Source: Styela clava (Eukaryota). Taken from it: a stretch of 64,000 bases of DNA. The notes below the pieces were generated by a model. The model was not told the origin of the DNA and did no database searches. It saw only the letters and a program-made list of their open reading frames with translations. Below, in pieces: positions 20,291 through 62,731 of this stretch; the stretch's first letter is position 1, and each line of letters begins with the position of its first letter. The stretch covers positions 12,214,001 through 12,278,000 of the forward strand of contig NC_135258.1 in assembly GCF_964204865.1 (NCBI RefSeq), in the 5' to 3' direction. The translations under genes were made by a program, and so were the position numbers.

Positions 20291-21704
20291 AAATGTTGAT
20301 TTTATGACATTTTGCTGGAATATTAAAATTTGCTGATTTCATTTTATTCAAGGAGTGTGTTGTACGTCAGCTACCGTTATCTCAGCTCAAATACTGACTG
20401 TCCAGTTAATCCTTTTCAAAAATGGAAAATAAATAAAATTCGAAGAAATTTGATTTTAAGGTTGATTATTCAAGCCCATATCCTGGCATGTGCCAAGGCC
20501 ATGATTATTGGAAAACTGGCAATTTTATGATTGATCCATAGTTGTTGAAATGATAGAACTATCTATATTAGTCATTCAATCGGTGCAGTTTGCTGAAATG
20601 ATGTGCTTAAAAGCTCGAAAGAAAATTTATTTATCATTTACTACATTGTAACGTAATGCGCGATCTCGCGATAAACAGTGCTACGAATTTGACTGATATC
20701 GATACAAGATGTCAACATAATTTGAACGACAATTTACAAAGCGACGTTTTCTGTCTTTGTGACATGGTTGGCATTTTTCGTTACAGTTTTATACTTCATG
20801 GAATGCGTCGCTGGGTATATTTGCCGCGAACTCGAGAAGCCAAAAAATTTGAAATTAAATATCCTGGCAAAATACCTGCATTTGTATTTGTGGAAATGTT
20901 TTTTTTATATCAACTCTGAAACAAAATTCTCTTCTACTTCTATCACTCAAGTTTAATCGATACCAATAAATTATATGTCATGGCACTGGTATTGTTTTTG
21001 AGGAGTTGAGAAGGCGATGATGTAAAATCTAAAAAATTTAAAACTAAAAAGGGGGCTCAGTGTCATGTTTTGAACCGGATGCCGTTTGAGATTAAACATG
21101 ATTTACTGGGTGGATAGCGTTGACTCGACAATTAGTCACAATTTGAACACAGTCATGATGGAATCCAACCCATTGAGAAATTACATTTTCTAAAATTACG
21201 ACAGGCGAGTTATTGCGACATACTGAGTTCCACGAATGACCGTTGGAACCGGTGGAATGAATGAATCAAAAATATATCATTAAATTAGTGGTTTGCAGTT
21301 GTTCTTGGAATAACACAAAATCATATATAAAATTATCGATTATAGAAGCCGATGGTAAAATATTTTTTTCAATACCAATGCTTTCTGAAATAGTCAGATT
21401 AATAGACAAGAAGAAACTTTCCAGTTGTTATGATTTAAGTGTCCTCCCTAAATAAGGTAACCATAAAATAGCTATGATACAATTTGATTATGAACTCGTC
21501 TGCCTTGTTTACAATTATACCCCAATCCCAATACTATTTTCAATAACAATAAGATTATGTTCATTTTGTTAAAAAAAAAAACAGGAAGTAAAATTGACTC
21601 ATTATCGACTGTTGTGTTTCGGCGAAAATTCGCCAGTCAGTCGAATCGAGAATTCCAAACTGTGAAACAAACTACGCAACAATAATAATCAATTGGTGAT
21701 AATT

Positions 21705-21788
21705 TGATTCAACAAGTAGTCGAATACTCACGTGGCTGAACGAATGTTAATGACAGCCCTGTTCGAATCCAACTAAACGATAAATCAC
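21705..21788 (-). ncRNA. pre-miRNA-like hairpin, family A (5p UAGUUGGAUUCGAACAGGGCUG)
   Basis: Basal stem UGAUUU/GAAUCA, UG at -14/-13, and downstream CACC. Confidence 0.7.
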
Positions 21789-22950
21789 AAGTTCAAGGAG
21801 CCATCGATATTTTACTATTGTCAAATGTACGACTTCCAAACTTCAAATCAGGAGAACTAAATTGAACATGAAATGAATTTTAGTACAAGTTCGTTTATCG
21901 CAGCACAATGCTTGGAAATACTATGTCATGGTTTTCCAAATGCGACAGACGATATCAAATATACCGGTAGTTAGATTACTGATTTTGTATGTTTTTGTTT
22001 ATAACATTAAATGAAAACTAATGATAGACAAGTTGGAATCCCACATTGTTGTACTGCGCAGTCATAGGTTTGTTGCTACACAAATCTGAGAAAAATCTGT
22101 GAGATTGCTGCTACTGATATTTTAGTTATGTTTTATGGGATGTTAGGTTTTTACTCGTTTGTGTTTTCTTGATAAAGTTGATATGTTTCACAATTGCGAA
22201 TATTTAGCTTCAACACTCATAACATGAGCCACAAAGAGATAGTATAATTTTAGTTCGAACATCTTTTTTGCGAAAGTAAATTATATGATTTACTAACATT
22301 ATTAGCAGATTGGACCATTATTATTTTGTTTACTCGAGAAAGAGGGAAATTAACCTAATTGATGTAATATTGAAACAGCATAAGAGACATGAAAATCATT
22401 TTCACAAAAATATTTTTATATTATATAACATTAATTAATATAAGAAAAAGATCTTTATCCTAGCGACAACGGAAATACTCAAATTTACAATAAAAGTACA
22501 ATCATGATTTATTTGACGGAAGAAAATGATTTCCATTGAATGGATTGAACATTAATAAATAAGATATTAAATTCAATTTTAATGTTCAAATCATGCAATA
22601 AAAAATAGTATAAAATTGTGGTGCGTTTTCGATCATCATAAAATTACACGTGAGAAAATTATTATTTTTTTGTCCCTGGTCTAATCGATGTAATGCGTAA
22701 TCATATCTTCAATATAGCATTTATATCGTCAAGCATTGATTATACTAAAAATGAATATAAAAACTATATAAATGGAACTTTGTTCAATCTTTTGCACTGT
22801 TGTAAGAACCCAAATACTCTAGCTAGTGTATAGTTTATCATATTGAGGCAAAATGATGCAATACCTACAATTTGATTGAATTCTATTGCGGTATGAGATG
22901 AGCAAATTTTCCTATTTTCGATTGGTTTCCAAAAAGAAAGAAGGAAATAA

Positions 22951-23025
22951 TTTTCATTGACTAAATTGAACATGAAATGAATATTAGGTAAAATTCAATT
23001 TCAATGTTCAACTCAACCAATAAAA
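22951..23025 (-). ncRNA. pre-miRNA-like hairpin, family B (5p GAGUUGAACAUUGAAAUUGAA)
   Basis: Stem of about 32 bp: UUUUAUUG..UGAGUUGAACAUUGAAAUUGAAU / AUUCAUUUCAUGUUCAAUUUAG.CAAUGAAAA. Confidence 0.75.
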
Positions 23026-23794
23026 CTTATGAATATACCAGGAATGTTCTTGTCAACATGCAACCAATATTAAATACTTTCATACATTTTCAGTCCAATA
23101 TTTATAGCGGATTATATAGTGGTTCTTGAAGTTCGACATTTCTGGTAACGTTAGATAGCAGGTTTGCTATGCTTCAGTGTTGATAGTGTTGGTTCGGCAA
23201 ATAGTTAGAAATTAACAGGTCTGTATAAAAACTGCTAACACCCCTGTTCAAATCCAACTGATTAGAGAACCACATAATTGGCACTGAACCACGCCGCCGT
23301 AAGTTGGATATGTTTTTTAGTTGGCGCAACTAATAGTCAGTGTTTCACGAGACCAATATCTTTCCATGCTATGTTCCGATGCGCAATGGTCCGTATTCGT
23401 ATAACGCAAGGGTGCTGAAGCAAAAATACGCAAATCTGCAAATTTACTGCTACAACTTTCGTGGTTATTGGTATCTAAGAAAACCTTTTGAATGAGGACT
23501 AAAAATTATTGTTTCACAGCTTGTATTTTGTATAATGCGAGGGGCACATAAAAAACTTTGCTTTAACGACCATGAGCTAAAATGGTGAAATTATAGGTAC
23601 GTTGTCATTTATGCAAAAATGAAACATGCTATTCATTATAAATTCCATTTGGTTCATTTAGGAAATAGGTAAATAGCTTTTATAAATTGCATGATGTGAA
23701 TTAAAGCTTAATTGTAGTTATCAATGTGTTAAACTCCGACAATAAAAATGTCCCAATTCTCAAGCCAGAAGTGAAAGTACTAGATTGAAATGTA

Positions 23795-23892
23795 CCGTGT
23801 TTCCCCGAATATAAAACCTACCCTGAAAATAAGACATAGCCTCAGTTTTGAAATGATTTTAATGTAAGCCCTCCTCTCAAAACAAGACCTAT
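23795..23892 (+). mobile_element. Left-end fragment of a Tc1/mariner-superfamily (Tc2/pogo-like) MITE
   Basis: TA followed by CCGTGTTTCCCCGAATATAAAACCTA with repeated AAATAAGAC-like subterminal motifs. Replaced by other sequence in the paralog near 27225. Confidence 0.45.
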
Positions 23893-23996
23893 AGCCGATA
23901 GACCTATAGTCGATAGCGAGAAATCTCTCGTACACGTTCCGAATGATAAATAATCTATGTTTTGGTAATTTGGTAAATTGTGTATTCGATAAACTG

Positions 23997-24183
23997 GGTT
24001 CCATTACATTTGAACCCACGTGCATTTGAACCCACGACGATTGCACCGGCATACTATTGCACCTATGGAAATTTTTGTTGTTTTATGGATATTTGAACCC
24101 ATACTAACCCTAACCCATGGGTTTAGCACCCGCATATAGATTGAACCCGCGAATATACACATGGGTTCAAATGTACGGTCACC
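23997..24183. mobile_element. Mutator-like MITE
   Basis: 22-bp TIRs (GGTTCCATTACATTTGAACCCA / TGGGTTCAAATGTACGGTCACC) and a perfect 9-bp TSD GATAAACTG. The empty site is present in the paralog near 27500. Confidence 0.9.
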
Positions 24184-25848
24184 GATAAACTGTTTTACCA
24201 GAGACGAAATTTTTGAAGACATTTTTGAAGAAATGCTTGTAAAAAGTCATTTTACAAAATAAAATCGACTTACCAATTTTCAAAATGATCGTTCCATTTA
24301 AAACATCGATTCTAACCGCCGTCGGAATGCCATAGAATTTGAGACTGGGGCTCTTCAGTTGGGAATACAGAAGCCATCAATATTCAATAGGCTACCATCT
24401 GCAACGATATTCACTATCACGAAAACTTCAGCTTAGCTTTGTTGTTGTTTTTTTTACAATGAAAAATCGTCATTTTGCTCTAAAAATAAATCTAGATTAC
24501 GAATCTCATATAATCCGAACTATAGCAAATGTGAGTAATAACAACTAAATGTCCAATTAATTGTTTTCTTATCTTTATAGAAAAATGTAACAATAGGACC
24601 CCAACGTAATTTATGTGATTTTTGTTATTCGGTTTACACGAAACATAAAATTAGATGAATATTTTGAAATGATAATACCTCAATATTATCTAAAATTCGA
24701 CAATTTCATTTAAATTATTGTTAGACTTTCACATGGCTGAACGAATGTTAATGACATCCCTGTTCGATAGATAAATCACAAGTTTTATCACTGATTTATC
24801 ACTTCCGACAAAATAACGAGTACCCACAATTTATTTGAATAAAATAAATCCAACAGTTAGACTTTCAATTGGGTTTTTCAAGTTGATGAAAATAGCTTCC
24901 ATTGTATAAATTGAACATGAAATGAATTATAACTATAATTTATAAGTAAAATTCTCTTTCGATGTTCAACTCTCGGAATGAAAACAAGGTTACGTAATAG
25001 AGGAAATGAAAGGGTGAATTAAAAAGGAAATAAAACGAACAAAAAAATTATGAAAAAAAATTTCCTATGATTACTAAAATTATAAAAGAATGATTTTTTT
25101 CCTGAGATTACTTATTGTGTATCATGCAATGTTAGTTGAACTAACATAAAACGGTTAAAACCATATATTCCTAAATTTAACAAAGCGTGTGATATTTGAA
25201 TATGATATAAAGGTCATGAAGGTACAAATCACAAGGTTTATCTGTGAGGAAAAAGCTATCAACTAATAGTTTTTGACGTCGTCTAATTTAAACCTATTTG
25301 CCGACAGCGTTGATTCAACAAACAGCTGATAACAAACTTGACTGAACGACTGAGAATGACAGCCTCGTTTGAATCCAACTAATTGTAAAATCACATATTT
25401 AACGATTTAATTGTAGGTTTGAGCCGATGCTTCACAAGGACGAACCTAATCACGAAATTGGAACACATACATATATATGAATAAACGAACGACATGCGTG
25501 CTCTACAGTCTCAATATTCTGTTGCATGTTTTTGTCTATTGTTTCAGGTAAAAATTCACATGAATATTATATTTTTGTCAATTAAGTTGGCTCGTTTCCG
25601 ACAGAAGAAAGTAATTTCCATCGAATGGATTGAACACAAAATGAATTAGGCAATAAATTCAATTTCAATGTTCAACTCAAACAATAAAAATTATATAAAA
25701 TTGTAATGCTCAATTTCTAATGTCACTTTAGTGATGGAAAAGTTTTTTTTACTTGGTTGTGTGAAAACAGTATTTATTTCTAATATTGGTAAAAATTTTG
25801 GTGACCGCTGGTCCTGCACTTCAACGTACATTTTTCTTTATTTTGGAC

Positions 25849-26706
25849 CATTGATTCCCAACCGCCGGTTCGCGAAGCTTTTTCGCCGGTCCGCTAGAAA
25901 ATTTCGGTGTTTTGTTGTTCTTATGCCGTCTAAATGCTTTACCGAGGACGAGGCTGCGTTGGTATATCACGCAATTTCTCTTTGGCCGTGATATTGCGAC
26001 ATCTTGGCGACGTCTTGGCGCCGTGTGATCACACTTTTTGCTTTATCGGCTCCGATTCATCGCGAACGCGCTCCATCAAATCTCGCAAAATTCAGAAACC
26101 TAAGAATTGGCACGCCTGCTTTTTCTGTTCTGCCTGCTTCTCCCGATTAATGTGAAATTGTCGCGACCTTGCAGAGGCGCAAAAAAGCATGGGCAGTTGA
26201 AGTCTTTTCCAGTATTTTGAGCAGGCACAGTAGGATTTTGAGCTTGGTGCCAAGTTACCGACAACTTTGTCATTGTAATATAAATTCATTTCGTTTGAAG
26301 CGTTGATCAACTGCAGAGGGATTAATATGTTAAACCAGATGAAAAAAAAAGCTTGATAAAAATTGTGATTCTACTTTACAGTCCAGATTAAAAAAGAATC
26401 ACTGACACAATTTTATACATCTCTTGATAACGAATACCCATCGCTAAGTAATCGAGCAATCAAACTGTTGTCCGTTTTTTTAACCAGTTATTTATGCGTT
26501 ATGCGGAAAATATTTTCATCAATAGCTTTAATTAAAACGAAGCAATGAAATTGGCTGCACGCCACACTGATAGTTTTTCTTAGTGTGAAATGTTTTGAAG
26601 TGTGTCCTTTATGTCCAGAAGCATATTGAGTGCCCGACATTACATTATATTACGCGAATATATGCTATTCTTTTCTGTTTCGGTTATTTCAATTTTTTGT
26701 CGGTCC
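25849..26706 (+). mobile_element. Internally deleted, right-truncated hAT (Charlie/Buster-type) transposon
   Basis: Left end CATTGATTCCCAACCGCCGG. 26396-26557 encodes decayed dimerisation domain ESLTQFYTSLDNEYPSLSNRAIKLLSVFLTSYLC...FSSIALIKTKQ*NWL. Absent from the paralog near 29145. Confidence 0.8.
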
Positions 26707-29560
26707 CTGTTTAAATCCAACTGATTGGAGAACCACATAATTGGCACTGAATCACGCCGCCGTAAGTTGGATATGTTTTTTAGTTGACGCAACTAATAGT
26801 CAGTGTTTCACGAGACTAATATCTTTCCATGTTATGTTCCGGTGAGCAATGGTCCGTATTCGTATACCGCAAGGGTGCTGAAGCAAAAATACGCAAATCT
26901 GCAAATTTACTGCTACAACTTTCGTAGTTGTTGGTATCTAAGAAAATCTTTTGAATGAGGACTAAAAATTATTGTTTCACAGCTTGTATTTTGTATAATG
27001 TGAGGATCACATAAAAAACTTTGCTTTAACGACTATGCGCTAAAATGGTGAAGTTTTCATTATAAATTCCATTTGGTTCATTTCGGAAAATAGGTAAATA
27101 GCTTTTATAATTTGCATAATGTGAATTAAAGCTTAATTGCAGTATCAATGTGTTAAACTCCGACAATAAAAATGTACCAATTCCCAGGCCAGAAGTAAAA
27201 GTACTAGATTGAAATTGTACCGTGTCTATAAATCTATAAAACGTATAAAGCAGTGTGGAGCGAAGCGACCTCACTAGTTATGTAGAAAAAATTTCGCGGA
27301 GAAATATGCTGACAAGGAAAAAATTTAGGAATAAATATGTGACCTAATATTCTGCTGTGACCTATATTATTGCTACAATCATTGCACCACGTTCTACGAA
27401 ATATGGCCTAAATATTATCTACAATATTGATTGATGACATTTTACAATCATAAAGCAATGAATAGACTAGCATTCCAAAATTTGGTAAATTGTGTATTTC
27501 ATAAGCTGTCTTTAGCAGAAACGAAATCTTAAAATTTTTGAAGAAATGCTTGCAAAAAGTCTTTTAAAAACAAAATCGACTTACCAATTTTGAAAATGAT
27601 CGTTCCATTTAATACATCGATGCTAACCGCCGTCGAGATGCCATAGAATTTGTGACTGGTGTCTTCAGTTGGGAATCAAGGAGCTACAGTCTACAACGAT
27701 TTTACTATCACGAAAACTTCAGCTTAACATTGCTGTTGTTGTTTTTTTAACGAAAAATCGGCATTTCGTTCTAAAAATCATTCTAGATTACGAATCTCAT
27801 ATAACCTGAACTATAGCAAAAGTGAGTGATGAAACAACAATTAATTGTTTTTCATCTCTTTATAGAAACATGTAACAAAAAGACCCCAACGTAATTTACG
27901 TGATTTTTGTTATTCGGTTTACACGAAACATAAAATTAGATGAATATTTTAAAATGATAATACCTCAATATTATCTAAATTTCGATAATTTGATTTACCA
28001 AATTGTCAGACTTTCACATGGCTGAACGAATGTTAATGACATCCCTGTTCGATAGATAAATCACAAGTTTTATCACTGATTTATCACTTCCCGACAAAAT
28101 AACGAGAACCCGCAATTTATTCGAATAAAATAAATCCAACAGTTAGACTTTCAATTGGTTTTTTCAAGTTGATGAAAATAGCTTCCATTGTATAAATTGA
28201 ACATGAAATGAATTATAACTATAATTTATAAGTAAAATTCTATTTTGATGTTCAACTCTCGGAATGAAAACAAGGTTACGTAATAGAGGAAATAAAAGGG
28301 TGAATTAAAAAGGAGATAAAACGAATAATAAAAATTATGAAAAAAAAATCCTAGGATTACTAAAATTATAAAAGAATGATTTTTTTCCTGAGATTACTTA
28401 TTGTGTATCATGCAATGTTAGTTGAACTAACATAAAACGGTTAAAACCATATATTCTTAAATTTAACAAAGCGTATGATATTTGGATATGATATAAAGGT
28501 CATGGAGGTACAAATCCCAAGGTTTATCTCTAAGGAAAAAGCTATCAACTTATAGTTTTTGAAGTCGTCTAATTTAAACTTAGTTGCCGACAGCGTTGAT
28601 TCAACAAACAGTTGATAACAAACTTGACTGAACGACTGAGAATGACAGCCTTGTTTGAATCCAACTAATTGTAAAATCACATTTTTAACGACTTAATTGT
28701 AGTTATGCGCCGAGGTCTCACAAGGACAAACATACTCACGAAATTGGAACGCATACATATATATGAATAAACGAACGACATGCGTGCTCAGCAGTCTCAA
28801 TATTCTGTTGCATGTTTTTGCTTTATTGTTAAGTAAAAATTCATATGAATATCAGTACATTCTATTTTTGTCAATTCAAGTTGGCTCGTTTCCGACAGAG
28901 GAAAATAATTTCCATCGAATGAATTGAACACAAAATGAATTAGGCAATAAATTCAATTTCAATGTTCAACTCAAACAATAAAAATTATATAAAATTGTAA
29001 TGCTTAATTTATAATGTCACTTTAGTGACAAAAAAGACTATTTTTACTTGGCTGTGTAAAAACAGTATTTATTTCTAACATTGGTATAGATTTTGGTGAC
29101 CTCTGGTCCTGCACGTCAACGTACATTTTTCTTTATTTCAAACCATTGGCCCCACTTTGAATATGTGAAGGTTCCCTATTTTTAAATGACTTCTTTTTTT
29201 TCAAAGGGTATTTTGTAATTTGCTCATATTTGCACCTTTTACCACCTTATTAGCGAATAATCATTGGCAGGGCGAGGAAGTGCGCGAGATGTCGAAATAT
29301 AATTTCTGGAAAGACGGGACCACAGTAATTTCGAAGTTTAAAGTTTTGAAATTGGAAAAAACGAGTGTTTTATTTGATGTTACAAATTGACTTTTCTCGG
29401 TCAATATAGGCGATGAATGTCTTTAAAATACATGTTATACATTGACGTGTGGTGCCGTACTAACCAATTAAAGCACCTCTTTGGTATTATCTTACCTAAT
29501 CTTTGATTATTAACCACAAAAGTACATAATACTGATTTTACTGTTAAGGGTGGCGGAAGT

Positions 29561-29645
29561 GTGTATTCGACAATTAGTTCGATTACAACATGACTGATTA
29601 AAATTGATAACAGCCCTGTTGGAATCCAACTGATGGGATAACCAC
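29561..29645 (-). ncRNA. pre-miRNA-like hairpin, family A (5p CAGUUGGAUUCCAACAGGGCUG)
   Basis: The 5p arm pairs with CAGUCAUGUUGUAAUCGAACUAA. Paralog of 32345-32429 with compensatory changes. Confidence 0.75.
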
Positions 29646-32344: not shown

Positions 32345-32429
32345 GTGTATTCGACAATTAGTTAGATTCTAACGTGACTGATTAAAATTGATAACAGTCC
32401 CGTTGGAATCCAACTGATGGTATATTCAC
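32345..32429 (-). ncRNA. pre-miRNA-like hairpin, family A (5p CAGUUGGAUUCCAACGGGACUG)
   Basis: The 5p arm pairs with CAGUCACGUUAGAAUCUAACUAA, nearly continuously. Confidence 0.78.
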
Positions 32430-32665
32430 AGATCTTTGTTCAGGTGCCATAAAAATAAATGAAAATGAAACTTTCTTTAGGTTGTTCGAAAATATTGATT
32501 TTACAGTAGCAATATTGAAATTTTTATTTTTATATACGCTAATATCGAAGCCTATCGATAGAGCTAAATGATGCATGTCGCATGAAGAAACATACTGCTA
32601 TAATAATAAAAAAAAAAACAGTTGAAGATAAGTTACCATCTTCTTCAATAGCTGAATAGCTAGAG

Positions 32666-50700: not shown

Positions 50701-52422
50701 TTTGCTGTTTAATCTTATTAAATGTATCTATCCAAATTGGCTTCTTCAAATCAGAAGAAAATAATTTTTATTGAGTAAATTGAACATGGAATGAATTAGA
50801 AGTAAAATTCAATTACAAGGTTCAACTCAAGCAATAAAACTTATGAAGGATTCCAGATTCATGAAAACATGCATCTGAAGATGCAATTCTGCCATTCCTA
50901 AACCTCAAAAAAGAAAGTACTTGCTGGTTTCAATTTTATCACTGGGCAATGGTGATAATATATATTCAGGAATTAGTTTAATGCAAACATGACCAAATAA
51001 ATTTAAACATCAGCGCCAGGTGACCTATCAGCGTAATAACTTTCTTGGTGCCTTATGTTATTGATATTAAATTTTGACAGCTTAATTAGATTAATTCGAA
51101 TACTAAATATACAACAAGTATATGAAACAGACATAAACAAAACATTCAACAAAAAAACGAGAATATCGGTCGGAGACCGAAGACTTATCGATCGAAACTG
51201 CGGTTTCGACCCTTGACTCTATAGTGACACCGCGTGTCCCATAACTAATTAATTAATATTTATACGACATAGTTCATCCAAAATCAATAGGCTTCTGGTC
51301 CAAGATATGATGAATGCACATGCAAAATTTGGAGCAGATTCAACCACACCTTCGAGATATCGCGTGCATCTAACAGACAGACAGACAAACAGACAAATAC
51401 CTATCAACATACTTACCGATCTAAAGATCGATAAGTAATAAATTAGTTTTCTCAATTGGAAATAAGTTGGAAAAATATTTCACTATTGCAAAAAATTGTA
51501 TAGATTTATCCAAGTTCCAACGTAAGAGAATAGTGCAAATTCTGTCTCACCTTCGACAATTCTTACAAGATGCATGTTATAAAACATCCTTATGTCACAC
51601 AAGATAGATTTCAGTACTTCCGGCAATCTCGGCGTATTAGTGAATTTCACATTCATGTAAAAACAAATACATTCTCATGAACAACACTATTTAATCAAGT
51701 TGCTGTAGGTAACGCCAATCAGAGTCGGTATACACTCAGAAAACTAAACTTTCGCTAACAGAATTCAATTGTAGCATTAGAAAACAAAATGGCGATGCCA
51801 CAAATATATCGACGAGACGCATTCGTCTGTCTACATCGAGCACCGCAGAATTCATCAGGAGAGAAAAAGATGTTAGTTTTCAACAAACAGATAGAACAAC
51901 CTTTTCATCTAGTGATATATAATTGATGTTACCGTTACTTTGAAAGTTGTACAACACCGAATCGACTGCGTCAAATTCAATGCAGAACACTCAGAATCGT
52001 TAGAGTTAAACTTATTATCAAATAAAAACTCACCGTATGCTATTCAAATCTAGATTTAAAGGAAATTTCGTTTTGTCATATATAGTCGACTACCCTCTCT
52101 CTCCCATTGATATAAATGAAACCTTGTCAAACTAAAAACTCAACTTTTCCATTTTTCGTCGATGATAATGTTGATTCAACAAATAGTTTGATCAAACATG
52201 GCTGCATAACATTTAACGACAGCCCTGTAAAAATCCAACTAAACGATAAATCACGTTGTAGAAGCTATGATCAATTTTTGCTGAATAATGAAATAAAAGT
52301 ATTGTATTTTGTCAACAAGGTTTGGCGCTTCAAGCTAAGTGGTACTGGTAAATTATAGAACTACAACATTGTAGGTTTTCAGTGGCAAAATGACAAAAGC
52401 AATGTCGTGTTGATTGACAATC

Positions 52423-52506
52423 TGATTCAACAAATGGCCAGGAACTTGCAGAACTGAACGAATATTATTAACAGTCCTGTTCGAATCCAACTAATCGATA
52501 GATCAC
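52423..52506 (-). ncRNA. pre-miRNA-like hairpin, family A array subtype (5p UAGUUGGAUUCGAACAGGACUG); copies 37131, 40516, 55356, 62429
   Basis: The 5p arm pairs with CAGUUCUGCAAGUUCCUGGCCA, with basal UG and downstream CAAC or CAAUC. Confidence 0.65.
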
Positions 52507-55500
52507 AAGTTCTAGGGATATAACCTATTGATGATTTTTCAAATTAATACAGAATAATGAAATGCAAACTATTTTTTGACTATTTTTGCTGTTTAATCTT
52601 ATCAAATGTATCGAATCCATTTTGGCTTCTTCAAATCAGAAGAAAATAATTTTCATTAAGTAAATTGAACATGGAATGAATTAGAAGTAAAATTCAATTA
52701 CAAGGTTCAACTCAAGCAATAAAACTTATGAAGGATTCCAGATTCATAAAAACATGCATCTGCATCTGAATTTAAACATCAGCGCCAGGTGACCTATCAG
52801 CGTAATAACTTTCTTGGTGCCCTATGTTTATTGATATTAAATTTTTTCAGCTTAATTAGATCAATTCGAATACTAAATATACAACAAGTATATGAAACAG
52901 ACATAAACAAAACAATAAATTAGTTGTCTCAATTGGAAATAAGTTGGAAAAATATTTCACTATTGCAACAAATTGTATAGATTTACCCAAATTCCAACGT
53001 AAGAGAATAGTGCAAATTCTGTCTCACCTTCGACATTTTCAAGATGCATGTTATAAAACATCCTCATGTCACAGTTTGAAAGTTGTATAACACCAAATCG
53101 ACTGCGTCAAATTAAATGAAGAATAGTTAGAGACTTAGAGTTAAACTCATTGACAAATAAAAACTTACCGCATGGTTATTCAAATATAGATTTAAAAGAA
53201 ATTTCTTATGGCATATATAGTCGACTACCCTCTCTCTCCCATTGATATAACTACTACCCTCTCCTATTTTTCGTCGATGATAATGTTGATTCAACAAATA
53301 GTTTGATCAAACATGGCTGCATAACATTTAACGACAGCCCTGTTAAAATCCAACTAAACGATAAATCACGTTCTAGAAGCTATGATCAATTTTTGCGGAA
53401 TAATGAAATAAAAACAATTTATTTAAAGAAAATACCGCGAATATTCCATTGCTGTATATTATTAGAAATATTGTTGAGTCTCAATTGGTTTCTTCAAATC
53501 AGATGAAATAAATTTTCATTACTAAATTGAACGTGAAATGAATAATAAATAATATTCAATTTCAATGTTCAACTCGGACATAAAAATTATTGTGTTGATT
53601 CCCAGGGTCATGTTGACAGGTATAATACCAACATTGTAAACTTTCATTTAGGTCTCCAGCACAAAAACATTTGAAAAAAAAAATTGAAGTTTGTTGTTAT
53701 ATATTCCATATAATGTAATTAACATTGTATACCAAGCAAGCTGCGTAAGAATATCTTTCAAATTAACCACAAGTGTGAAAATACGACCCGATTTTAGTTT
53801 GATCACATGGCACAGGTGATAACATAGATTCAACAATTCGCTAGATGCAAACGTGGCCAAATAAATTGACAACAGCCCTGTTTAAATCCAACTGATGGTA
53901 AAACTATTTTCTTGAAAAGCACTAAAGTAGCGATTCCAGTCTCCAGGCTATCGGTTTAAAATCGATTATGCATTTAAGTATATTGAAACTAAAATTTTGG
54001 AAATACGGCATCAATATTACCGATGCCCGATTACATTCAACAAATATACCGTCAAGACTGGGAAATCTATGACGCTTCGGTCATGCTCACAAAACCGAAT
54101 CGAAGACTGATAAAACAGTCTTGGAAACCTATCACTATGTTTCATTTATTAAATATAAATTAACTTAAATAGCAGGCTACATGATAAATGATAAACTAGT
54201 TGAAGATAAACGTGAACACAGAATACAAGAATATGATGTTTGTCAGAAAATGAAACAAGAAAGAGATTATCTGCTTTTCGAAAAGCCATCGCGAACAATA
54301 TCGAAAAACTCCTCTTTTATCTCGTATCGATAATATTTACCTAATAAAGATATGATAGTTAACACCGGTAACGTGCCGGGAATTATTTTGAGTTCTGGCA
54401 GATAACGTGCATATAGTTTACAAAATATGGTAAAGCTGTTATCAGCGACAATTGACTATGAATTCATTTAAAATAAACGTACCGTAGTTCAACCTTTGAC
54501 GAAAGATGTTCCAAGCAATCCTCATCTATTATCAGACGAATTGTACACTCTCTCGCCTTCTTTGCTTAAAACTTTTTAACCGCATTTTCAATTAACAGGT
54601 AAAACCTGACGCACGAAAGCTTTAAAACTACTCGTCTAATGGGCTCGCAAAAGTTTGAACTATACGATCTGAAAACATTTCTTCAGAAAGAAATTTCTTA
54701 CGTTGTACATCACTCTCTGAATGTAAGAAGAAACTCACTCCGATTTCTCTCGCTGACCTCATGCTGATCCAACGACAAGTTGGCGCCGAAAGCTTCAATA
54801 TTTTTCTCTTTAATTTAACCGTGTTGCGTTCATCAGCTGAACATCTTGTTAGTTTTCAATTGCGAAATGACTCTTCTTCACTTATGGGTTAAGAATGTGA
54901 TTTTTCGTGTTTTATTGAAGTCCCGCCCCCATGTGCAAGCATTTTGGACACTGTTAACCACTACAACGCCCATGACTATAGCTCGATTCCGCGTCTGCAG
55001 TTATCGTGATTTTAAACGATAACGGGTTAATCTGGCTGCAGCTGGAGAAATTTCGATTTTAAAGGCATTCGGTAAAAGGGCTGCTTCCTAGTTACCTTAA
55101 CCCCATCTAGCTATTTCCATGTTTTAACCCGTTCTTTACAATACTTAAAGTTCAAGACCAGCATTCTTCGTTTGAATTGCAATTCAGAAATCATTTCGAC
55201 TAGATCTTTACGAACTACATCTGATGCTAAAAGTATTGTATTTTGTCAACGACGTTTGGCGCATCAAGCTCAGTGGTACTGGTAAATTATAGAACTACAA
55301 CATTGTAGGTTTTCAGTGGCAAAATGACAAAGGCAATGTCAAAGTGTTGACAATCTGATTCAACAAATGGCCAGAAACTTGCAGAACTGTACGAATATTA
55401 TTAACAGTCCTGTTCGAATCTAACTAATCGATAGATCACAAGTTCTAGGGATATAACCTGTTGATGATTTATCATATAAATACAGAATAATAAAATGCTA

Positions 55501-58500
55501 ACTAATTTTCAACTATTTTTGCTGTTTAATCTTATCAAATGTGTCGAATCCAGATTGGCTTCTTCCAATCAGAAGAAAATAATTTTCGTTGAGTAAATTG
55601 AACATGGAATGAATTAGAAGTAAAATTCAATTACAAGGTTCAACTCAAGCAATAAAACTTATGAAGGATTCCAGATTCATAAAAACATGCATCTAAAGAT
55701 GCAATTCTGCCTTTCCTAAACCTCAAAAAAGAAAGTACTTGCTGGTTTCAATTTTATCACTCGCCAATGGTGATTACATAGATTCAGGAATTAGTTTAAT
55801 GCAAACATGGCCAAATAAATTTAAACATCAGCGCCAGGTGACCTATCAGCGTAATAACTTTCTTGGTGCCTTATGTTATTGATATTAAATTTTGACAGCT
55901 TAATTAGATCAACTCGAATACTAACTATGAAACAGACATAAACAAAACATTCAACAAAAAAATAAATTAGTTTTCTCAATTGGAAATAAGTTGGAAAAAT
56001 ATTTCACTATTGCAACAAATTGTATAGATCTAAGTTCCAACGTAAGAGAATAGTGCAAATTCTGTCTCACCTTCAACATTTCTTACAAGATGCATGTTAT
56101 AAAACATCCTTATGTCACACAAGATAGGTTTCAGTACTTCCGGCACTCTCTGCGTATTAGTGAATTTCACATTCCTGTAGAAACATATACATTGTCATGA
56201 ACAACACTATTTAACCGAGTTGCTGTAGGTAACGCCACCCAGAGTCGGTATACACTCAGAAAACCAAACTTTCGCGAACATAATTCGATTATAGGATTAG
56301 AAAACAAAATGGCGATGCCACAAATATATCGACGAGACCATTCATCTGTCCACATCGAGCACCGCAGAATTCATCAGGAGAGAAAAAGATGTTAGTTTTC
56401 AACAAGCAGATAGAACAACATTTTCATCTAGTGATTTATAATTGATGTTACCGTTACTTTGAAAGTTGTACAACACCGAATTGACTGCGTCAAATTCAAT
56501 GCAGAACACTCAGAATCGTTAGAGTTAAACTTATTATCAAATAAAAACTTACCGTATGCTATTCAAATCTAGATTTGAGAGAAATTTCGTTTTGTCATAT
56601 ATAGTCGACTACCCTCTCTCTCCCATTGCTATAAATGAAACCCTGTCAAACTAAAAACTCAATTTTTCCATTTTTCATCAATGATAATGTTAATTCAACA
56701 AATAGTTTGATCAAACATGGCTGCATAACATTTAACGACAACTAAACGATAAATCACGTTGTAGAAGCTAGGATCAATTTTTGCAGAATTATGAAATAAA
56801 AACAATTGATTTAAAGGAAATACCGCGAATATTCTATTGCTGTATATTATTAGAAAAATTGTTGACTCTCAATTGGTTTCTTCAAATCAGATGAAAATAA
56901 TTTTCATTGACTAAATTGAACATGATATGAATAATAAATAATATTCAATTTCAATGTTCAACTCAAACATAACAATTATTGTGTTGAGTCCCAGAGCCAT
57001 GTTAACACGTATAATACCAACATTGCAAACTTTCATTTAGGTCTCCAGCACAATAACATTTAAAAAAAAATTGAGTTTTGTTGTTATATATTCCATATAA
57101 TGTAATTAACATTGTATAACAAGCAAGCTGCGTAAGAATATCTTTCTTAACCACAGGTGTGAAAACACCTCCCGATTTTAGTTTGATCACACGGCACAGT
57201 TGATAACATAGATTCAACAATTCGCTAGATGTAACCATGACCAAATAAATTGACAACAGCCCTGTTTGAATCCAACTGATGGTAAAACTATTCTCTTGAA
57301 AAGTACTAAAGTAGCGGATCGGAAAGATTCAATTACTCCAGTCTCCAGACTATCGGTATAAAATTGAATATGCATTCAAGTATATTGGAACTAAAATTTT
57401 GGAAATACGGCACCACTATTAGCGATGCACGATCACATACCGGTACAACAAATATATCGTCAAGACTGGGAAATCTATAAGGCTTCGGTCATGCTCACAA
57501 AACCGAATCGGAGAATAATAAAACAGTCTTGGAAACCTATCACTATGTTTCATTTATCAAATATAAATTAACTTAGATGCCAAAAACAGTCTACATGATA
57601 AATAATAAACTAGTTGTAGATAAACGTGAACCCAGAATACAAAAATATGATGTTTGTCAGAAAATGAAACAAGTGCAGATTATCTGCATTTCAAAAAGCT
57701 ATCGCAAACAACATCGAAAAACTATTATTTTATCTCGTATTGATGATATTTAACTGATAAAGATATGATAGTTAACACCGGTAATGTGCCGGGAATTATT
57801 TGAAATTGATATAGATAACGTGTATATATATATAGTTTACAAAGTACGGTAAAGCTGTTATCAGCGGCAATTGACTATGAATTCATTTGAAATAAACGTA
57901 CCGTAGTTCAACCTATGACGAAAAATGTTCCAAGCAATCCTCATCTATTATCATACTATTTGTACACTCTCTTGCCACCTTTGCCCGAAACTTTTTAACA
58001 GCATTTTCAATTAACAGGTAAAACCTGACGAACGAAAGCTTCAAAACTACACGTCTAACAGGCTCGCGAAAATTTGAACTATACGTTCTGAAAACATTTA
58101 TTAGAAATGAAATTTCTTACGTTGTACATCACTCTCTGAATGTAACAAAAAACTCACTCCGATTTCGCTCGCTGACCTCATGCTGATCCAACGACAAGTT
58201 GGCGCCGAAAGCTTCAATATTTTTCTCTGCGAATTAACCGTGTTGCGTTCATTAGCTAAACATCTTGTTAGTTTTCAATTGCGAAATAACTCTTCTTTAC
58301 TAAAGGGTTAAGAATGTGATTTTTCGGTTTTATTGAAGTCCCGCCCCCAGGTGCAAGCATTTTGGACACCGTTAACCACGACAACGCCCATGACTGTAAC
58401 ACGATACAGTGTTTTCAGCCATAGTGATTTGAAATAGAAACGGGTTAATCTGACTGCAGCTGCAACAATTTCGATTTTGAAAGCACTCAGAAAAAGTCTG

Positions 58501-61500
58501 CTATCGTGGTACCCTAACCCCATCTCCCTGTTCCCATGTTTCAAACCGTTCTTTACAAAACTTAAAGTTCAAGGCCAGCATTCTTCGTTTGAATTGCAAT
58601 TCAGAAACCATTTCGTCTAGATCTTCACGAACTACATCTCATGCTAAAAGTATTGTATTTTGTCAATGACGTTTGGCGCATCAAGCTCAGTGGTACTGGT
58701 AAATTATTGAACTACAACATTGTAGGTTTTCAGTGACAAAATGACAAAAGCAATGTCGTGTTGACAATCTGATTCAACGAATGGCCAGAAACTTGCAGAA
58801 CTGAACGACTATTATTAAAAATGCATTAAATAAATAACTATTTTGTGACTATTTTTGCTGTTTAATCTTATTAAATGTATCTATCCAAATTGGCTTCTTC
58901 AAATCAGAAGAAAATAATTTTTATTGAGTAAATTGAACATGGAATGAATTAGAAGTAAAATTCAATTACAAGGTTCAACTCAAGCAATAAAACTTATGAA
59001 GGATTCCAGATTCATGAAAACATGCATCTGAAGATGCAATTCTGCCATTCCTAAACCTCAAAAAAGAAAGTACTTGCTGGTTTCAATTTTATCACTGGGC
59101 AATGGTGATAATATATATTCAGGAATTAGTTTAATGCAAACATGACCAAATAAATTTAAACATCAGCGCCAGGTGACCTATCAGCGTAATAACTTTCTTG
59201 GTGCCTTATGTTATTGATATTAAATTTTGACAGCTTAATTAGATTAATTCGAATACTAAATATACAACAAGTATATGAAACAGACATAAACAAAACATTC
59301 AACAAAAAAACGAGAATATCGGTCGGAGACCGAAGACTTATCGATCGAAACTGCGGTTTCGACCCTTGACTCTATAGTGACACCGCGTGTCCCATAACTA
59401 ATTAATTAATATTTATACGACATAGTTCATCCAAAATCAATAGGCTTCTGGTCCAAGATATGATGAATGCACATGCAAAATTTGGAGCAGATTCAACCAC
59501 ACCTTCGAGATATCGCGTGCATCTAACAGACAGACAGACAAACAGACAAATACCTATCAACATACTTACCGATCTAAAGATCGATAAGTAATAAATTAGT
59601 TTTCTCAATTGGAAATAAGTTGGAAAAATATTTCACTATTGCAAAAAATTGTATAGATTTATCCAAGTTCCAACGTAAGAGAATAGTGCAAATTCTGTCT
59701 CACCTTCGACAATTCTTACAAGATGCATGTTATAAAACATCCTTATGTCACACAAGATAGATTTCAGTACTTCCGGCAATCTCGGCGTATTAGTGAATTT
59801 CACATTCATGTAAAAACAAATACATTCTCATGAACAACACTATTTAATCAAGTTGCTGTAGGTAACGCCAATCAGAGTCGGTATACACTCAGAAAACTAA
59901 ACTTTCGCTAACAGAATTCAATTGTAGCATTAGAAAACAAAATGGCGATGCCACAAATATATCGACGAGACGCATTCGTCTGTCTACATCGAGCACCGCA
60001 GAATTCATCAGGAGAGAAAAAGATGTTAGTTTTCAACAAACAGATAGAACAACCTTTTCATCTAGTGATATATAATTGATGTTACCGTTACTTTGAAAGT
60101 TGTACAACACCGAATCGACTGCGTCAAATTCAATGCAGAACACTCAGAATCGTTAGAGTTAAACTTATTATCAAATAAAAACTCACCGTATGCTATTCAA
60201 ATCTAGATTTAAAGGAAATTTCGTTTTGTCATATATAGTCGACTACCCTCTCTCTCCCATTGATATAAATGAAACCTTGTCAAACTAAAAACTCAACTTT
60301 TCCATTTTTCGTCGATGATAATGTTGATTCAACAAATAGTTTGATCAAACATGGCTGCATAACATTTAACGACAGCCCTGTAAAAATCCAACTAAACGAT
60401 AAATCACGTTGTAGAAGCTATGATCAATTTTTGCTGAATAATGAAATAAAAACAATTTATTTAAAGAAAATACCGCGAATATTCTATTGCTGTATATTAT
60501 TAGAAAAATTGTTGACTCTCAATTGGTTTCTTCAAATCAGATGAAAATAATTTTCATTGACTAAATTGAACATGATATGAATAATAAATAATATTCAATT
60601 TCAATGTCTAACTCAAACATAAAAATTATTGTGTTGAGTCCCAGGGCCATGTTAACACGTATAATACCAACATTGCAAACTTTCATTTAGGTCTCCAGCA
60701 CAATAACATCGAAGAAAAAAAGGGGTTTTGGTGTTTTATATTCCATATAATGTAATTAACATTGTATAACAAGCAAGCTGCGTAAGAATATCTTTCTTAA
60801 CCACAGGTGTGAAAACACCTCCCGATTTTAGTTTGATCACACGGCACAGGTGATAACATAGATTCAACAATTCGCTAGATGTAGACATGACCAAATAAAA
60901 TGACAACAGCCCTGTTTGAATTCAACTGGTGGTAAAACTATTCTCTTGAAAAGCACTCTAAAGTAGCGAATCGGAAAGATTCAATTACTCCAGTCTCCAG
61001 ACTATCGGTATAAAATCGAATATGCATTCAAGTAAATTGGAACTAAAATTTTGGAAATACGGCACCACTATTAGCGATGCACGATCACATTCAACGAATA
61101 TATCGTCAAGACTGGGAAATCTATAAGGCTTCGGTCATGCTCACTAAACCGAATCGGAGAATAATGAAACAGTCTTGGAAACCTATCACTATGTTTCATT
61201 TATCAAATATAAATTAACTTGGATGCCAAAAACAGGCTACATGATAAATAATAAACTAGTTGTAGATAAACGTGAACACAGAATACAAAAATATGATGTT
61301 TGTCAGAAAATGAAACAAGTGCAGATTATCTGAATTTCAAAAAGCTATCGCAGACAACATCGACAAATTCTTCTTTTATCTCGTATTGATAATATTTAAC
61401 TGATAAAGATATGATAGTTAACACCGGTAATGTGCGCGGAATTATTTGAAATTGATGTAGATAACGTGTATATATATATATATATATATATAGTTTACAA

Positions 61501-62655
61501 AATACGGTAAAGCTGTTATCAGCGTCAATTGACTATGATTTCATTTAGAATAAACGTACCGTAGTTCAACCTTTGACGAAAAATGTTCCAGGCAATCCTT
61601 ATATATTATCATACGATTTGTAAACTCTCCCGCCTCCTTTGCCCGAAACTTTTCAACAGCATTTTCAATTAACAGGTAAAACCCGACGAACGAAAGCTTT
61701 AAAACTACACGTCTAACAGGCACGCAAAAATTTGAACTATACGTTCTGAAAACATTTCTTAAAATGAAATTTCTTACGTTGTACATCACTCTCTAAATGT
61801 AAGAAAAAAATTCACTCCGATTTCTCTCGCTGACCTCATGCTGATCCAACGACAAGTTGGCGCCGAAAGCTTCAATATTTTTCTCTGCGAATTAACCGTG
61901 TTGCGTTCATTACCTAAACATCTTGTTAGTTTTCAATTGCGAAATGACTCTTCTTTACTTATGGGTTCAGAATGTGATTTTTCGTGTTTTATTGAAGTCC
62001 CGCCCCCAGGTGCAAGCATTTTGGACACCGTTAACCACGACAACGCTCATGACTGTAACACGATACAGTGTCTCCAGCCACAGTGATTTGAAATAGAAAC
62101 GGGTTAATCTGGCTGCAGCTGCAACAATTTCGATTTTGAAATCACTCAGAAAAAGGCTGCTACCGTGGTACCCTAACCCCATCTAGCTATTTCCATGTTT
62201 TAACCCATTTTTTACAATACTTAAAGTTCAAGGCCAGCATTCTTCGTTTGAATTGCAATTCAGAAATCATTTCGACTAGATCTTTATGAACTACATCTGA
62301 AGCTAAAAGTATTGTATTTTGTCAACGACGTTTGGCGCATCAAGCTAAGTGATACTGGTAAATTATAGAACTACAACCTTGAAGATTTTCAGTGGCAAAA
62401 TGACAAAAGCAATGTCGTGTTGACAATCTGATTCAACAAATGGCCAGAAAGTTGCAGAACTGAACGAATATTATTAACAGTCCTGTTCGAATCCAACTAA
62501 TCGATAGATCACAAGTTCTAGGGATATAACCCTATTGATGATTTTTCATATTAATACAGAATAATAAAATGCAAACTATTTTTTGACTATTTTGCTGTTT
62601 AATCTTATCAAATGTATCGAATCCAGATTGGCTTCTTCAAATCAGAAGAAAATAA

Positions 62656-62731
62656 TTTTCATCAAGTAAATTGAACATGGAATGAATTAGAAGTAAAATT
62701 CAATTACAAGGTTCAACTCAAGCAATAAAAC
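62656..62731 (-). ncRNA. pre-miRNA-like hairpin, family B array subtype 2 (5p GAGUUGAACCUUGUAAUUGAA); copies 42680, 45967, 47116, 50765, 52650, 55583, 58918
   Basis: The 5p arm pairs with UUCAUUCCAUGUUCAAUUU, with downstream CUUC. Confidence 0.68.

What the first reader, a model, noticed from the sequence alone, without database searches (positions are those of the whole stretch)
21690..62731. Microprocessor signals retained at fixed spacing: CNNC with freely varying middle bases, plus basal UG
Seen: about 17-18 nt 3' of the predicted 3p cut, family A copies carry CACC (21705, 40993), CAAC (23188, 37131), CGGC (25309), CAGC (35898), CAUC (43783), CCAC (21119) and CUUC (15632). Family B copies carry CUUC, CAUC or CCUC (plus-strand GAAG/GATG/GAGG before AAAATAATT). 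Only the two C positions are held. Many A copies also have UG at -14/-13 if the 5p arm starts at the base before AGUUGG. Known: CNNC at +16-18 and basal UG at -14/-13 are Microprocessor-enhancing motifs of bilaterian pri-miRNAs. This independently supports strand, cut site and the nt 2-8 seed assignment.
Basis: partly seen in the sequence, partly recalled or inferred. Interest (0 to 1): 0.8.

Follow-up and report, generated by a model that had tools for sequence, protein, structure and literature searches.

The report
CNNC processing motif in microRNA cluster
About 55 hairpins in a 53-kb microRNA-like gene cluster carry the short C-N-N-C tag that helps the Drosha enzyme cut microRNA precursors, at the same distance as in this animal's conserved microRNAs, so they look like ordinary, correctly built microRNA genes of two unannotated families.

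Summary
On the minus strand, 26 of 30 in-window family A hairpins and 22 of 24 family B hairpins carry CNNC starting 16-18 nt after the predicted 3p Drosha cut. All 10 deep A lineages and all 7 B lineages have it; flank shuffles give 1.2 and 0.45.

With shared ancestry corrected by counting substitution events on a tree, family A shows 0 and 1 changes at the two C columns. The two middle columns show 4 and 7 (p=0.003), and columns beyond the second C average about 5. Family B gives no such support.

The key new evidence is a calibration in the same genome. Ten of 11 conserved pri-miRNAs (let-7, mir-124, mir-7, mir-34-like, mir-133; not mir-219) have CNNC at +16..18, and 5 of 11 have UG at -14.

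The mirror motif is absent on the other strand, and only the minus strand folds.

No small-RNA reads exist, so the cut sites remain predicted, to within ±1 nt. This is a known mechanism in new family members.

The parts
13776..64000 (-). Co-oriented cluster of family A and family B hairpins. It runs on past the window end to at least window-equivalent 67088 (G000:C10:12281100).
   Evidence: nhmmer, covariance-model and whole-genome searches. Family A hits in the 377-Mb genome all lie in C10:12227770-12281100.
13776..13867 (-). A13857, distal family A hairpin. CAUC at 13779-13776, first C at +18. UG at -14/-13.
15621..15714 (-). A15704 unit (lineage a1). CUUC at 15624-15621, +18. No UG at -14; UG at -12.
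17196..17289 (-). A17279 unit (a1). CCUC at 17199-17196, +18.
21695..21789 (-). A21779 unit (a2). CACC at 21698-21695, +17. UG at -14/-13.
23179..23274 (-). A23264 unit (a3). CAAC at 23182-23179, +18, plus a proximal CAAC at +9. UG at -14.
25300..25395 (-). A25385 unit (a4). CGGC at 25303-25300, +18. UG at -14. Sister copies A28671 (28586-28681) and A31858 (31773-31868) are the same.
29552..29646 (-). A29636 unit (a5). CGCC at 29555-29552, +18. UG at -14. Sister copy A32420 (32336-32430) also has CGCC.
35888..35981 (-). A35971 unit (a2b). CAGC at 35891-35888, +16/17. UA at -14.
37121..37215 (-). A37205 unit (a7). CAAC at 37124-37121, +17. UG at -14. Sisters: A40590 (40506-40600), A55430 (55346-55440), A62503 (62419-62513), and A52497 (52409-52507), where a 4-nt duplication moves CAAC to +21.
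40984..41073 (-). A41063 unit (a6). CACC at 40987-40984, +18. No UG (AA at -14/-13, UA at -12/-11). Sisters with CACC: A38974 (38890-38984), A44381 (44298-44391), A53898 (53815-53908), A60932 (60849-60942). Sisters with CAAC: A49128 (49045-49138), A57282 (57199-57292).
43774..43868 (-). A43858 unit (a8). CAUC at 43777-43774, +18, plus a proximal CAAC at +9. CG at -14/-13 and UG at -12/-11. Sisters: A52245 (52161-52255), A53360 (53276-53370), A60398 (60314-60408), and A38448 (38361-38458), where CAUC is moved to +21.
48510..48604 (-). A48594: intact hairpin whose motif has decayed to CAUU. It is the only loss of a C in an intact copy. Its recent duplicate at about 56686-56764 shares CAUU and has lost most of the 5p arm.
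31022..31097 (-). A31097: copy with a 4-nt insertion in the 5p arm and no CNNC at +16..21.
22519..22607 (-). B22607 unit (lineage b1). CUUC at 22522-22519, +17.
22940..23029 (-). B23029 unit (b2). CUUC at 22943-22940, +17.
24885..24987 (-). B24987 unit (b3). CAUC at 24888-24885, +17. Sisters: B28273 (28171-28273) and B31306 (31217-31306).
25604..25693 (-). B25693 unit (b4). CUUC, +17. Sisters: B28987 (28898-28987, CCUC) and B32157 (32068-32157, CUUC).
40750..40839 (-). B40839 unit (b7). CUUC at 40753-40750, +17.
55572..55661 (-). B55661 unit (b5). CUUC at 55575-55572, +17. Eight sister copies with CUUC: B37430, B42758, B46045, B47194, B50843, B52728, B58996, B62734 (coordinates).
48736..48825 (-). 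B48825 unit (b6). CAUC at 48739-48736, +17. Sisters: B53590 (+16), B56979, B60629. B38677 (38588-38677) has UAUC and B44089 (44000-44089) has CAUU, so both have lost the motif.
24694..24780 (-). Relic family A copy with the seed part of the 5p arm deleted and CGAA in place of CNNC. Its twin lies at 27988-28065.
37546..37601 (-). Relic 3' half of an a6-type hairpin: the 5p arm has been replaced and CACC is still present. Seven more copies lie near 42914, 46207, 47365 (CCCC), 51014, 55832, 59167 and 62892. Four a7-type relics near 42578, 45865, 50664 and 58817 still carry CAAC.

Best explanation
The window holds a polycistronic cluster of lineage-specific animal microRNA genes on the minus strand, in two hairpin families (A and B) that match no Rfam family. 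Each unit is built like a canonical pri-miRNA. It has a stem of about 34-36 bp (a lower stem of about 12 bp plus an upper stem of about 22 bp), single-stranded flanks, and a CNNC tetramer 17-18 nt downstream of the predicted 3p Drosha cut, which is 5-8 nt beyond the basal junction.

By analogy with human pri-miRNAs, an SRSF3/SRSF7-type SR protein would bind this CNNC, hold Drosha at the basal junction, and so favour productive cleavage at the right site. Purifying selection has therefore kept the two C positions, and the U before them, through repeated tandem duplication, while the middle bases and everything downstream drifted. A basal UG at -14/-13 (in some A lineages) and an invariant apical UGU (family A) probably add to recognition.

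Shown here:
- the hairpins and their covariation;
- the strand;
- the motif position and its slow evolution in family A;
- the same offsets in this genome's conserved miRNAs.

Inferred:
- the exact cut sites;
- expression of the cluster;
- SR-protein binding;
- any effect of the motif on processing.
For: - Structure. The given 27-bp structure is 83% paired across 27 distinct A copies, against 27-40% when the partner is slid. Nine pairs have changes on both sides, four of them in the lower stem.
- Strand. The minus strand folds at -24.8 and -27.8 kcal/mol (z -1.9 and -2.8). The plus strand does not form the hairpin (z about 0).
- Position. CNNC lies at +16..18 in 26 of 30 A copies and 22 of 24 B copies, and in 10 of 10 A and 7 of 7 B lineages. 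Shuffles give 1.2 and 0.45. The background is 0.084 per 3-nt window.
- Ancestry-corrected rates in A (Fitch events over 31 intact copies):
  - first C: 0; second C: 1;
  - first middle base: 4; second middle base: 7;
  - seed columns: 0-1;
  - spacer columns: mean 2.9;
  - next 10 columns downstream: mean 5.3;
  - C columns against middle columns: p=0.003.
- Losses. Three of the four losses of CNNC lie in lineages that contain damaged hairpins: 24780/28065, 31097 and 67088v. The fourth is shared by intact 48594 and its truncated twin 56764.
- Same-genome calibration. Ten of 11 conserved pri-miRNAs have CNNC at +16..18, although paralogue flanks are otherwise unalignable. Five of 11 have UG at -14.
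- Mirror control. There is no consistent GNNG upstream on the minus strand.
- Literature. CNNC lies 16-18 nt from the cut, in about 60% of conserved human pri-miRNAs. [quoted passage not shown] The canonical offsets are restated in PMC5570168 and PMC9905709.
Against: - No small-RNA data could be found. The RNA-run contigs laid on 21001-27000 cover only dispersed repeats and none of the hairpins, so neither transcription nor cut sites are shown.
- All A and B copies probably descend from one or two ancestral units, so the event-based test rests on two columns and about 12 events.
- In family B the C columns change no less often than their neighbours, and N2 is invariant.
- Dead half-hairpins still carry CNNC. 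Presence in recent copies therefore says nothing about selection.
- The spacer between the basal junction and the CNNC is also fairly conserved (mean 2.9 events). Measured against it, the C columns are only modestly slower (Poisson p about 0.02).
- UG at -14/-13 has 2 events per column, no better than its neighbours. The better-kept UG lies at -12/-11.
- The apical UGU starts at +21, 1 nt short of the textbook +22.
Confidence: 0.8

Rival explanations
1. Pure ancestry. The C..C is a frozen piece of the ancestral duplicated unit and is under no selection. Its fit to +17/18 would reflect a functional ancestor or chance, not present function.
For: Relic copies without a 5p arm keep CACC or CAAC. 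In family B the C columns are no slower than their neighbours. The A test uses only two columns. The whole spacer is moderately conserved.
Against: In A the two C columns show 1 event against 11 in the two middle columns, across 10 deep lineages whose downstream flanks are no longer alignable. C is normally the more mutable base in an AT-rich genome (general knowledge), which makes this contrast conservative. The offset stays within 16-18 despite 1-nt indels in the spacer. The same position is kept in 10 of 11 unrelated conserved pri-miRNAs of the genome.
Confidence: 0.12
2. The hairpins are not Drosha substrates. They could be a tandemly amplified repeat with an inverted-repeat core, or another kind of hairpin RNA, with the CNNC as an incidental part of the repeat.
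For: There is no expression evidence. There is no Rfam match. Large parts of the region are recent 3-5 kb tandem duplications.
Against: The stems are about 35 bp, with compensatory changes and strand-specific G-U pairs. The conservation gradient is that of a miRNA: seed, then arm, then loop. All copies point the same way. Three separate Microprocessor motifs sit at or within 1 nt of their textbook offsets under a single assumed cut. This genome's conserved miRNAs follow the same rules.
Confidence: 0.05
3. The conserved UCNNC is an SR-protein site that serves splicing or 3'-end handling of the host transcript, or it is part of a local structure. In family B, for example, UUCUUC-UGAUUU-GAAGAA could form a small hairpin. 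On this reading it does not serve Microprocessor recruitment.
For: SRSF3 and SRSF7 are splicing factors (PMC9905709). In family B the motif can pair with a downstream GAAGAA.
Against: The motif keeps a fixed distance from the hairpin base in two families with different flanks, and in the conserved miRNAs. B copies with CAUC are not compensated in the GAAG partner. Family A has no such downstream partner.
Confidence: 0.03

Closest known systems
[quoted passage not shown]
   Same: It is a tetramer with two fixed Cs and variable middle bases. It lies in the 3' single-stranded flank, 16-18 nt after the 3p cut and a few nt beyond the basal junction. It is strand-specific. It accompanies a stem of about 35 bp, a basal UG and an apical UGU.
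   Different: Here the cut is predicted, not mapped. Binding and stimulation were not tested. The motif is usually preceded by U (UCNNC). The frequency is higher than the roughly 60% reported for human: 10 of 11 conserved hairpins, and about 90% of cluster copies.
Multiple CNNC sites in polycistronic clusters (the miR-17-92 cluster, where SRSF3 binds several CNNC motifs downstream of Drosha sites; PMC10328067, abstract only read)
   Same: Many hairpins lie on one presumed transcript, each with its own downstream CNNC.
   Different: This cluster has about 55 hairpins from two families made by recent tandem duplication. No selective-processing data exist for it.
Large lineage-specific miRNA arrays. 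An earlier scan note on another piece of this genome calls them ascidian miR-4000-family clusters. Other examples, recalled from general knowledge, are zebrafish miR-430 and primate C19MC.
   Same: They are tandemly amplified, co-oriented hairpins with a shared seed and birth-and-death turnover, including relic copies.
   Different: Families A and B match no Rfam model. Family A occurs only at this one locus. I could not test any relation to named ascidian families. Papers on Ciona miR-4000/4018 hold no matching strings.

Membership tests
Canonical (Drosha/DGCR8-dependent) animal pri-miRNA | Imperfect stem of about 35 bp with a terminal loop and single-stranded flanks | tested here: met
   Family A has 12 + 22 bp and a 15-nt loop. 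Family B has about 35-36 bp and an 8-nt loop. A is 83% paired over 27 pairs, with covariation in 9 of them.
Canonical (Drosha/DGCR8-dependent) animal pri-miRNA | Conservation gradient: seed and guide arm more conserved than the star arm and loop | tested here: met
   Mean Fitch events per column: 5p arm 1.4 (seed columns 0-1), 3p arm 3.0, loop 2.8, downstream flank 5.3.
Canonical (Drosha/DGCR8-dependent) animal pri-miRNA | Small RNAs of about 22 nt with fixed 5' ends from both arms, offset by 2-nt 3' overhangs | not testable with these tools
   No small-RNA runs were offered. The RNA-run contigs do not cover the hairpins.
CNNC-bearing (SRSF3-assisted) pri-miRNA | CNNC starting 16-18 nt 3' of the 3p Drosha cut, not fully base-paired | tested here: met
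   It is at +17/18 in 26 of 30 A copies and at +16/17 in 22 of 24 B copies under the predicted cut. In A it is unpaired in the MFE folds. The cut itself is predicted, to within ±1 nt.
CNNC-bearing (SRSF3-assisted) pri-miRNA | The two Cs evolve more slowly than the middle bases and the surrounding flank | tested here: met
   In family A: 1 event against 11, p=0.003. This is not met in family B, where the events are C1 1, N1 3, N2 0 and C2 1.
CNNC-bearing (SRSF3-assisted) pri-miRNA | SRSF3/SRSF7 binding, and CNNC-dependent stimulation of cleavage | not testable with these tools
   This needs biochemistry.
Pri-miRNA with a basal UG motif | U at -14 and G at -13 from the 5p cut | tested here: inconclusive
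   It is present in 13 of 30 A copies (6 of 10 lineages) and in 0 of 24 B copies. Those columns have 2 events each, like their neighbours. The UG at -12/-11 is kept better. The genome's conserved miRNAs have it in 5 of 11.
Pri-miRNA with an apical UGU motif | UGU at the apical junction, about 22 nt from the 5p cut | tested here: met
   In family A, UGU is invariant in 29 aligned copies at 5p positions 21-23, 1 nt short of +22. It is absent from family B.
Any miRNA family curated in Rfam 15 | A covariance-model match at or near the gathering score | tested here: not met
   There are no hits at gathering score over the 64-kb window. With E up to 1 over 13000-45000, the only hit is a 29.9-bit match to plant MIR9560 at 17550-17640.

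The most novel reading that the evidence does not exclude
This animal's pri-miRNAs may use a two-part downstream signal. Besides the canonical (U)CNNC at +16..18, 8 of 11 conserved pri-miRNAs in the genome carry a second (U)CNNC starting at +8..10, at the 3' side of the basal junction. The shuffle mean is 2.0, and none of 20,000 shuffles reached 8. Family A keeps this proximal copy (AAUCAAC at +9) in only three of its ten lineages, and family B lacks it. If real, it would be a lineage-specific addition to the Microprocessor/SR-protein code. It might also separate old, strongly processed miRNAs from young cluster copies.
Probability: 0.2. Interest if true: 0.55.

Novelty: new member of a known kind. 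Interest (0 to 1): 0.3.

Why it matters
The result gives sequence-only support that about 55 unannotated hairpins are genuine Drosha substrates read from the minus strand. It narrows the guide-strand 5' end to within ±1 nt, and so narrows the seed, which is AGUUGGA if the 5p arm starts at the base before AGUUGG.

It also shows that the CNNC and UG offsets defined in human apply in this genome: 10 of 11 and 5 of 11 conserved pri-miRNAs respectively. These offsets can therefore be used to annotate the many lineage-specific hairpin arrays in this assembly.

The mechanism itself is textbook, so the gain is in annotation and calibration, not in concept.

Tried and rejected
- Rfam: no family matched, at gathering score or by E-value.
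- Whole-genome search with a family A covariance model: no copies outside this locus, so no extra independent lineages.
- Sequencing runs: only DNA holders of the assembly sample, plus RNA-labelled contig sets that cover just two dispersed repeats in 21001-27000. There were no small-RNA or raw-read runs, so no ends, strand or expression could be read.
- Literature: string searches for the arm sequences found only unrelated primers. Two Ciona savignyi miR-4000/4018 papers and their supplements hold no match. The original CNNC paper (PMC3707628) is not held, so I cite secondary sources.
- Rfam searches of the genome for mir-9, mir-10 and mir-1 found nothing. The first-look filter scores only about 60 candidates, so this is not evidence of absence.
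The full table showed a UGUG in other lineages, so UG at -14/-13 is real in 13 copies.
- MFE folding mis-set the cut in about 8 copies. I replaced it with offsets read from the alignment.
- Using relic copies as a neutral control gave too few events for a test.
Full report
WHAT IS THERE

The window is AT-rich (33-36% GC). It is G000:C10:12214001-12278000 of a 377-Mb assembly. The genome encodes let-7, mir-124, mir-7, mir-133, mir-219 and a mir-34-like hairpin, so it is a bilaterian animal. An earlier scan note calls it an ascidian; I did not test that. A TIP120/CAND1 exon lies at 5602-5800 on the plus strand.

From about 13.8 kb to the window end, and about 3 kb beyond it, the minus strand carries two families of hairpins inside 3-5 kb tandem duplications.

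- Family A has the 5p arm Y-AGUUGGAUUC.AACAGGGCUGU. There are 30 hairpin copies in the window, 2 intact copies and 2 variant copies just beyond it, and about 20 relics.
- Family B has the 5p arm U-GAGUUGAACAUUGAAAUUGAAU. There are 24 copies in the window and 1 beyond it.

A covariance model of family A finds copies nowhere else in the genome. Rfam has no matching family.

ARE THEY HAIRPIN RNAs ON THE MINUS STRAND?

Yes, as far as sequence can show.

- A 27-pair structure is 83% paired across 27 distinct A copies, against 27-40% when the 3' partner is slid. Nine pairs have changes on both sides, four of them in the lower stem.
- The minus strand folds into the full hairpin at -24.8 and -27.8 kcal/mol (z -1.9 and -2.8). 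The plus strand of the same DNA does not fold that way (z about 0), because many pairs are G-U.
- Stem geometry in A is about 12 bp lower stem, 22 bp upper stem and a 15-nt loop. In B the stem is about 35-36 bp.
- The seed columns are invariant or nearly so.

THE OBSERVATION

I set +1 by alignment to a reference copy. The 5p start is the base before AGUUGG, and the 3p end leaves a 2-nt overhang.

- Family A has CNNC with its first C at +17 or +18 in 26 of 30 in-window copies.
- The exceptions are one copy with a damaged 5p arm (A31097), two copies where small insertions move the motif to +21 (A38448, A52497), and one intact copy with CAUU (A48594).
- Family B, with the 5p start at the U before GAGUUGAAC, has CUUC, CAUC or CCUC at +17 (+16 in one copy) in 22 of 24 copies. 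B38677 has UAUC and B44089 has CAUU.
- The background on this strand is 0.028 per position and 0.084 per 3-nt window.
- One representative from each of the 10 deep A lineages and 7 B lineages carries the motif at +16..18. Shuffling +11..+32 gives 1.2 and 0.45 on average and never reaches the observed counts.

CORRECTING FOR SHARED ANCESTRY

I built a tree of the intact A copies from all columns upstream of the CNNC and counted Fitch events per column.

| Columns (31 intact copies) | Events |
|---|---|
| First C | 0 |
| First middle base (N1) | 4 |
| Second middle base (N2) | 7 |
| Second C | 1 |
| Seed columns | 0-1 each |
| Spacer between basal junction and motif | mean 2.9 |
| Ten columns after the second C | mean 5.3 (an underestimate, as they barely align) |

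- C columns against middle columns: one-sided binomial p=0.003, or 0.011 if two variant copies beyond the window are included.
- Using those column means as Poisson rates (my own arithmetic), the C columns are also slower than the downstream rate (about 3e-4) and the spacer rate (about 0.02).
- The lineage states can be read off the alignment by eye and give the same counts.
- The alignable block ends at the second C in deep comparisons.
- Three of the four CNNC-loss events lie in lineages that contain damaged hairpins. These numbers are too small for a test.
- Dead half-hairpins that are recent duplicates still carry CACC or CAAC. Mere presence in young copies is therefore ancestry.
- Family B copies are too similar to one another. 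Their C columns (1 and 1 events) do not differ from their neighbours, and N2 never varies. B adds position but no ancestry-corrected evidence.

CALIBRATION IN THE SAME GENOME

This is the strongest new evidence. I took 11 conserved pri-miRNAs found with Rfam models. I placed the Drosha cut from the conserved 5' end of the mature arm plus the fold, or from a 22-nt 3p arm for mir-124 and mir-133.

- CNNC starts at +16 in one, +17 in six and +18 in three, so 10 of 11 have it. Only mir-219 lacks it.
- Shuffles give a mean of 1.9, and none of 20,000 reached 10.
- The flanks of the let-7 and mir-124 paralogues are otherwise unalignable. These are therefore near-independent retentions.
- UG at -14 occurs in 5 of 11, where chance gives about 0.06 per hairpin.

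This animal therefore uses the offsets described for human: UG at -14/-13, and CNNC at 16-18 in about 60% of conserved pri-miRNAs, where SRSF3 recruits DROSHA only when the motif lies about 17 nt from the cut (PMC6004053; PMC5570168; PMC9905709).

STRAND AND CUT SITE

- The mirror motif (GNNG upstream on the minus strand) is absent: 2 copies at -25 and 2 at -13. The signal is strand-specific.
- Moving the 5p start 1 or 2 nt inward would put the CNNC at +18/19 or +19/20, away from the calibrated mode of +17.
- This agrees with the conservation pattern: position 1 varies between U and C, while AGUUGGA is invariant.

UG AND UGU

- UG at -14/-13 is present in 13 of 30 A copies (6 of 10 lineages, as UGUG). 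Those columns have 2 events each, like their neighbours.
- The UG at -12/-11, inside the stem, is kept better (0 and 2 events).
- Family B has no UG at -14. The UG claim is true as worded ("many A copies"), but it is weak evidence.
It sits at the apical junction, 1 nt short of the textbook +22.

WHAT COULD NOT BE SHOWN

- No small-RNA or raw-read runs were available. RNA-labelled contig sets of the same species cover only two dispersed repeats in 21001-27000. Expression, real 5' ends and SR-protein dependence are therefore all inferred.
- No related genomes were reachable for orthologue comparison.

VERDICT

- The CNNC observation is real and lies at the canonical offset. In family A it is better conserved than ancestry alone explains.
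- This is a known mechanism seen in new, unannotated miRNA families: a useful annotation result of modest interest.
- The scan noted this cluster before on the same DNA (s1-825744) and noted similar arrays on another piece of the genome (s1-813313).

Noticed in passing
L002-L012 (conserved pri-miRNA loci of the same genome); window family A lineages a3, a4 and a8, e.g. 43786-43783: In 8 of 11 conserved pri-miRNAs a second CNNC, often UCNNC, starts at +8..10 at the 3' side of the basal junction. The shuffle mean is 2.0, and none of 20,000 shuffles reached 8. Family A has the matching AAUCAAC (+9) in only 3 of 10 lineages, and family B has none. Paralogy among the let-7 and mir-124 copies may inflate the count.
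   Followed up: partly
L002-L012 and family A/B flanks: The base before the first C is U in 8 of the 10 conserved hairpins that have the motif, and in most A and B copies. N1 is mostly A. The local consensus therefore looks like UCANC rather than bare CNNC. From memory, this resembles reported SRSF3 binding preferences; I did not check that here.
   Followed up: partly
window, all family A copies, 5p positions 21-23 (e.g. 43834-43832): UGU at the apical junction is invariant in all 29 aligned family A copies. It is a likely apical UGU (DGCR8) motif, 1 nt short of the textbook +22. It is absent from family B.
   Followed up: partly
window 24694-24780, 27988-28065, 56686-56764, 21116-21169, 33448-33488, 26701-26727; near 37601, 42914, 46207, 47365, 51014, 55832, 59167, 62892; near 42578, 45865, 50664, 58817: There are about 20 relic family A copies: half-hairpins, or copies with internal deletions of the 5p arm. 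They were carried along by later tandem duplications, which shows birth-and-death turnover inside the cluster.
   Followed up: partly
family B 3' flanks, e.g. window 55556-55577 (minus strand): UUCUUC-UGAUUU-GAAGAA after each family B hairpin could form a 6-bp mini-hairpin that would bury the CNNC. Copies with CAUC are not compensated in the GAAG partner. A further conserved CCAAU follows about 14 nt downstream.
   Followed up: no
window 23600-24200 and 25800-26800: These are dispersed repeats. They are the only parts of 21001-27000 covered by contigs of four RNA-labelled runs, at 90-95% identity and very high summed depth (24001-24200). The contigs run on into many unrelated flanks, so this is probably a transposon-like or SINE-like element.
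   Followed up: no
window 5602-5800 (+), perhaps also 4466-4801 (+): An exon encodes a TIP120/CAND1 domain (Pfam PF08623, E 1.5e-28). A protein-coding gene on the plus strand therefore lies to the left of the cluster.
   Followed up: partly
window 17550-17640 (-): This hairpin has the 5p arm GUAGUUGAACAAAAACAAG, intermediate between the A and B seeds. It gives a weak, below-threshold Rfam match to plant MIR9560 (29.9 bits, E 0.04), which is almost certainly chance.
   Followed up: no
L001 (G000:C10:12278001-12288000), window-equivalent 64432-67088: The cluster continues past the window end with two intact A copies, one B copy and two variant A copies. One variant has the seed changed to AAUUGG. 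The other has GGUCGG and has also lost the second C (CAUA).
   Followed up: partly
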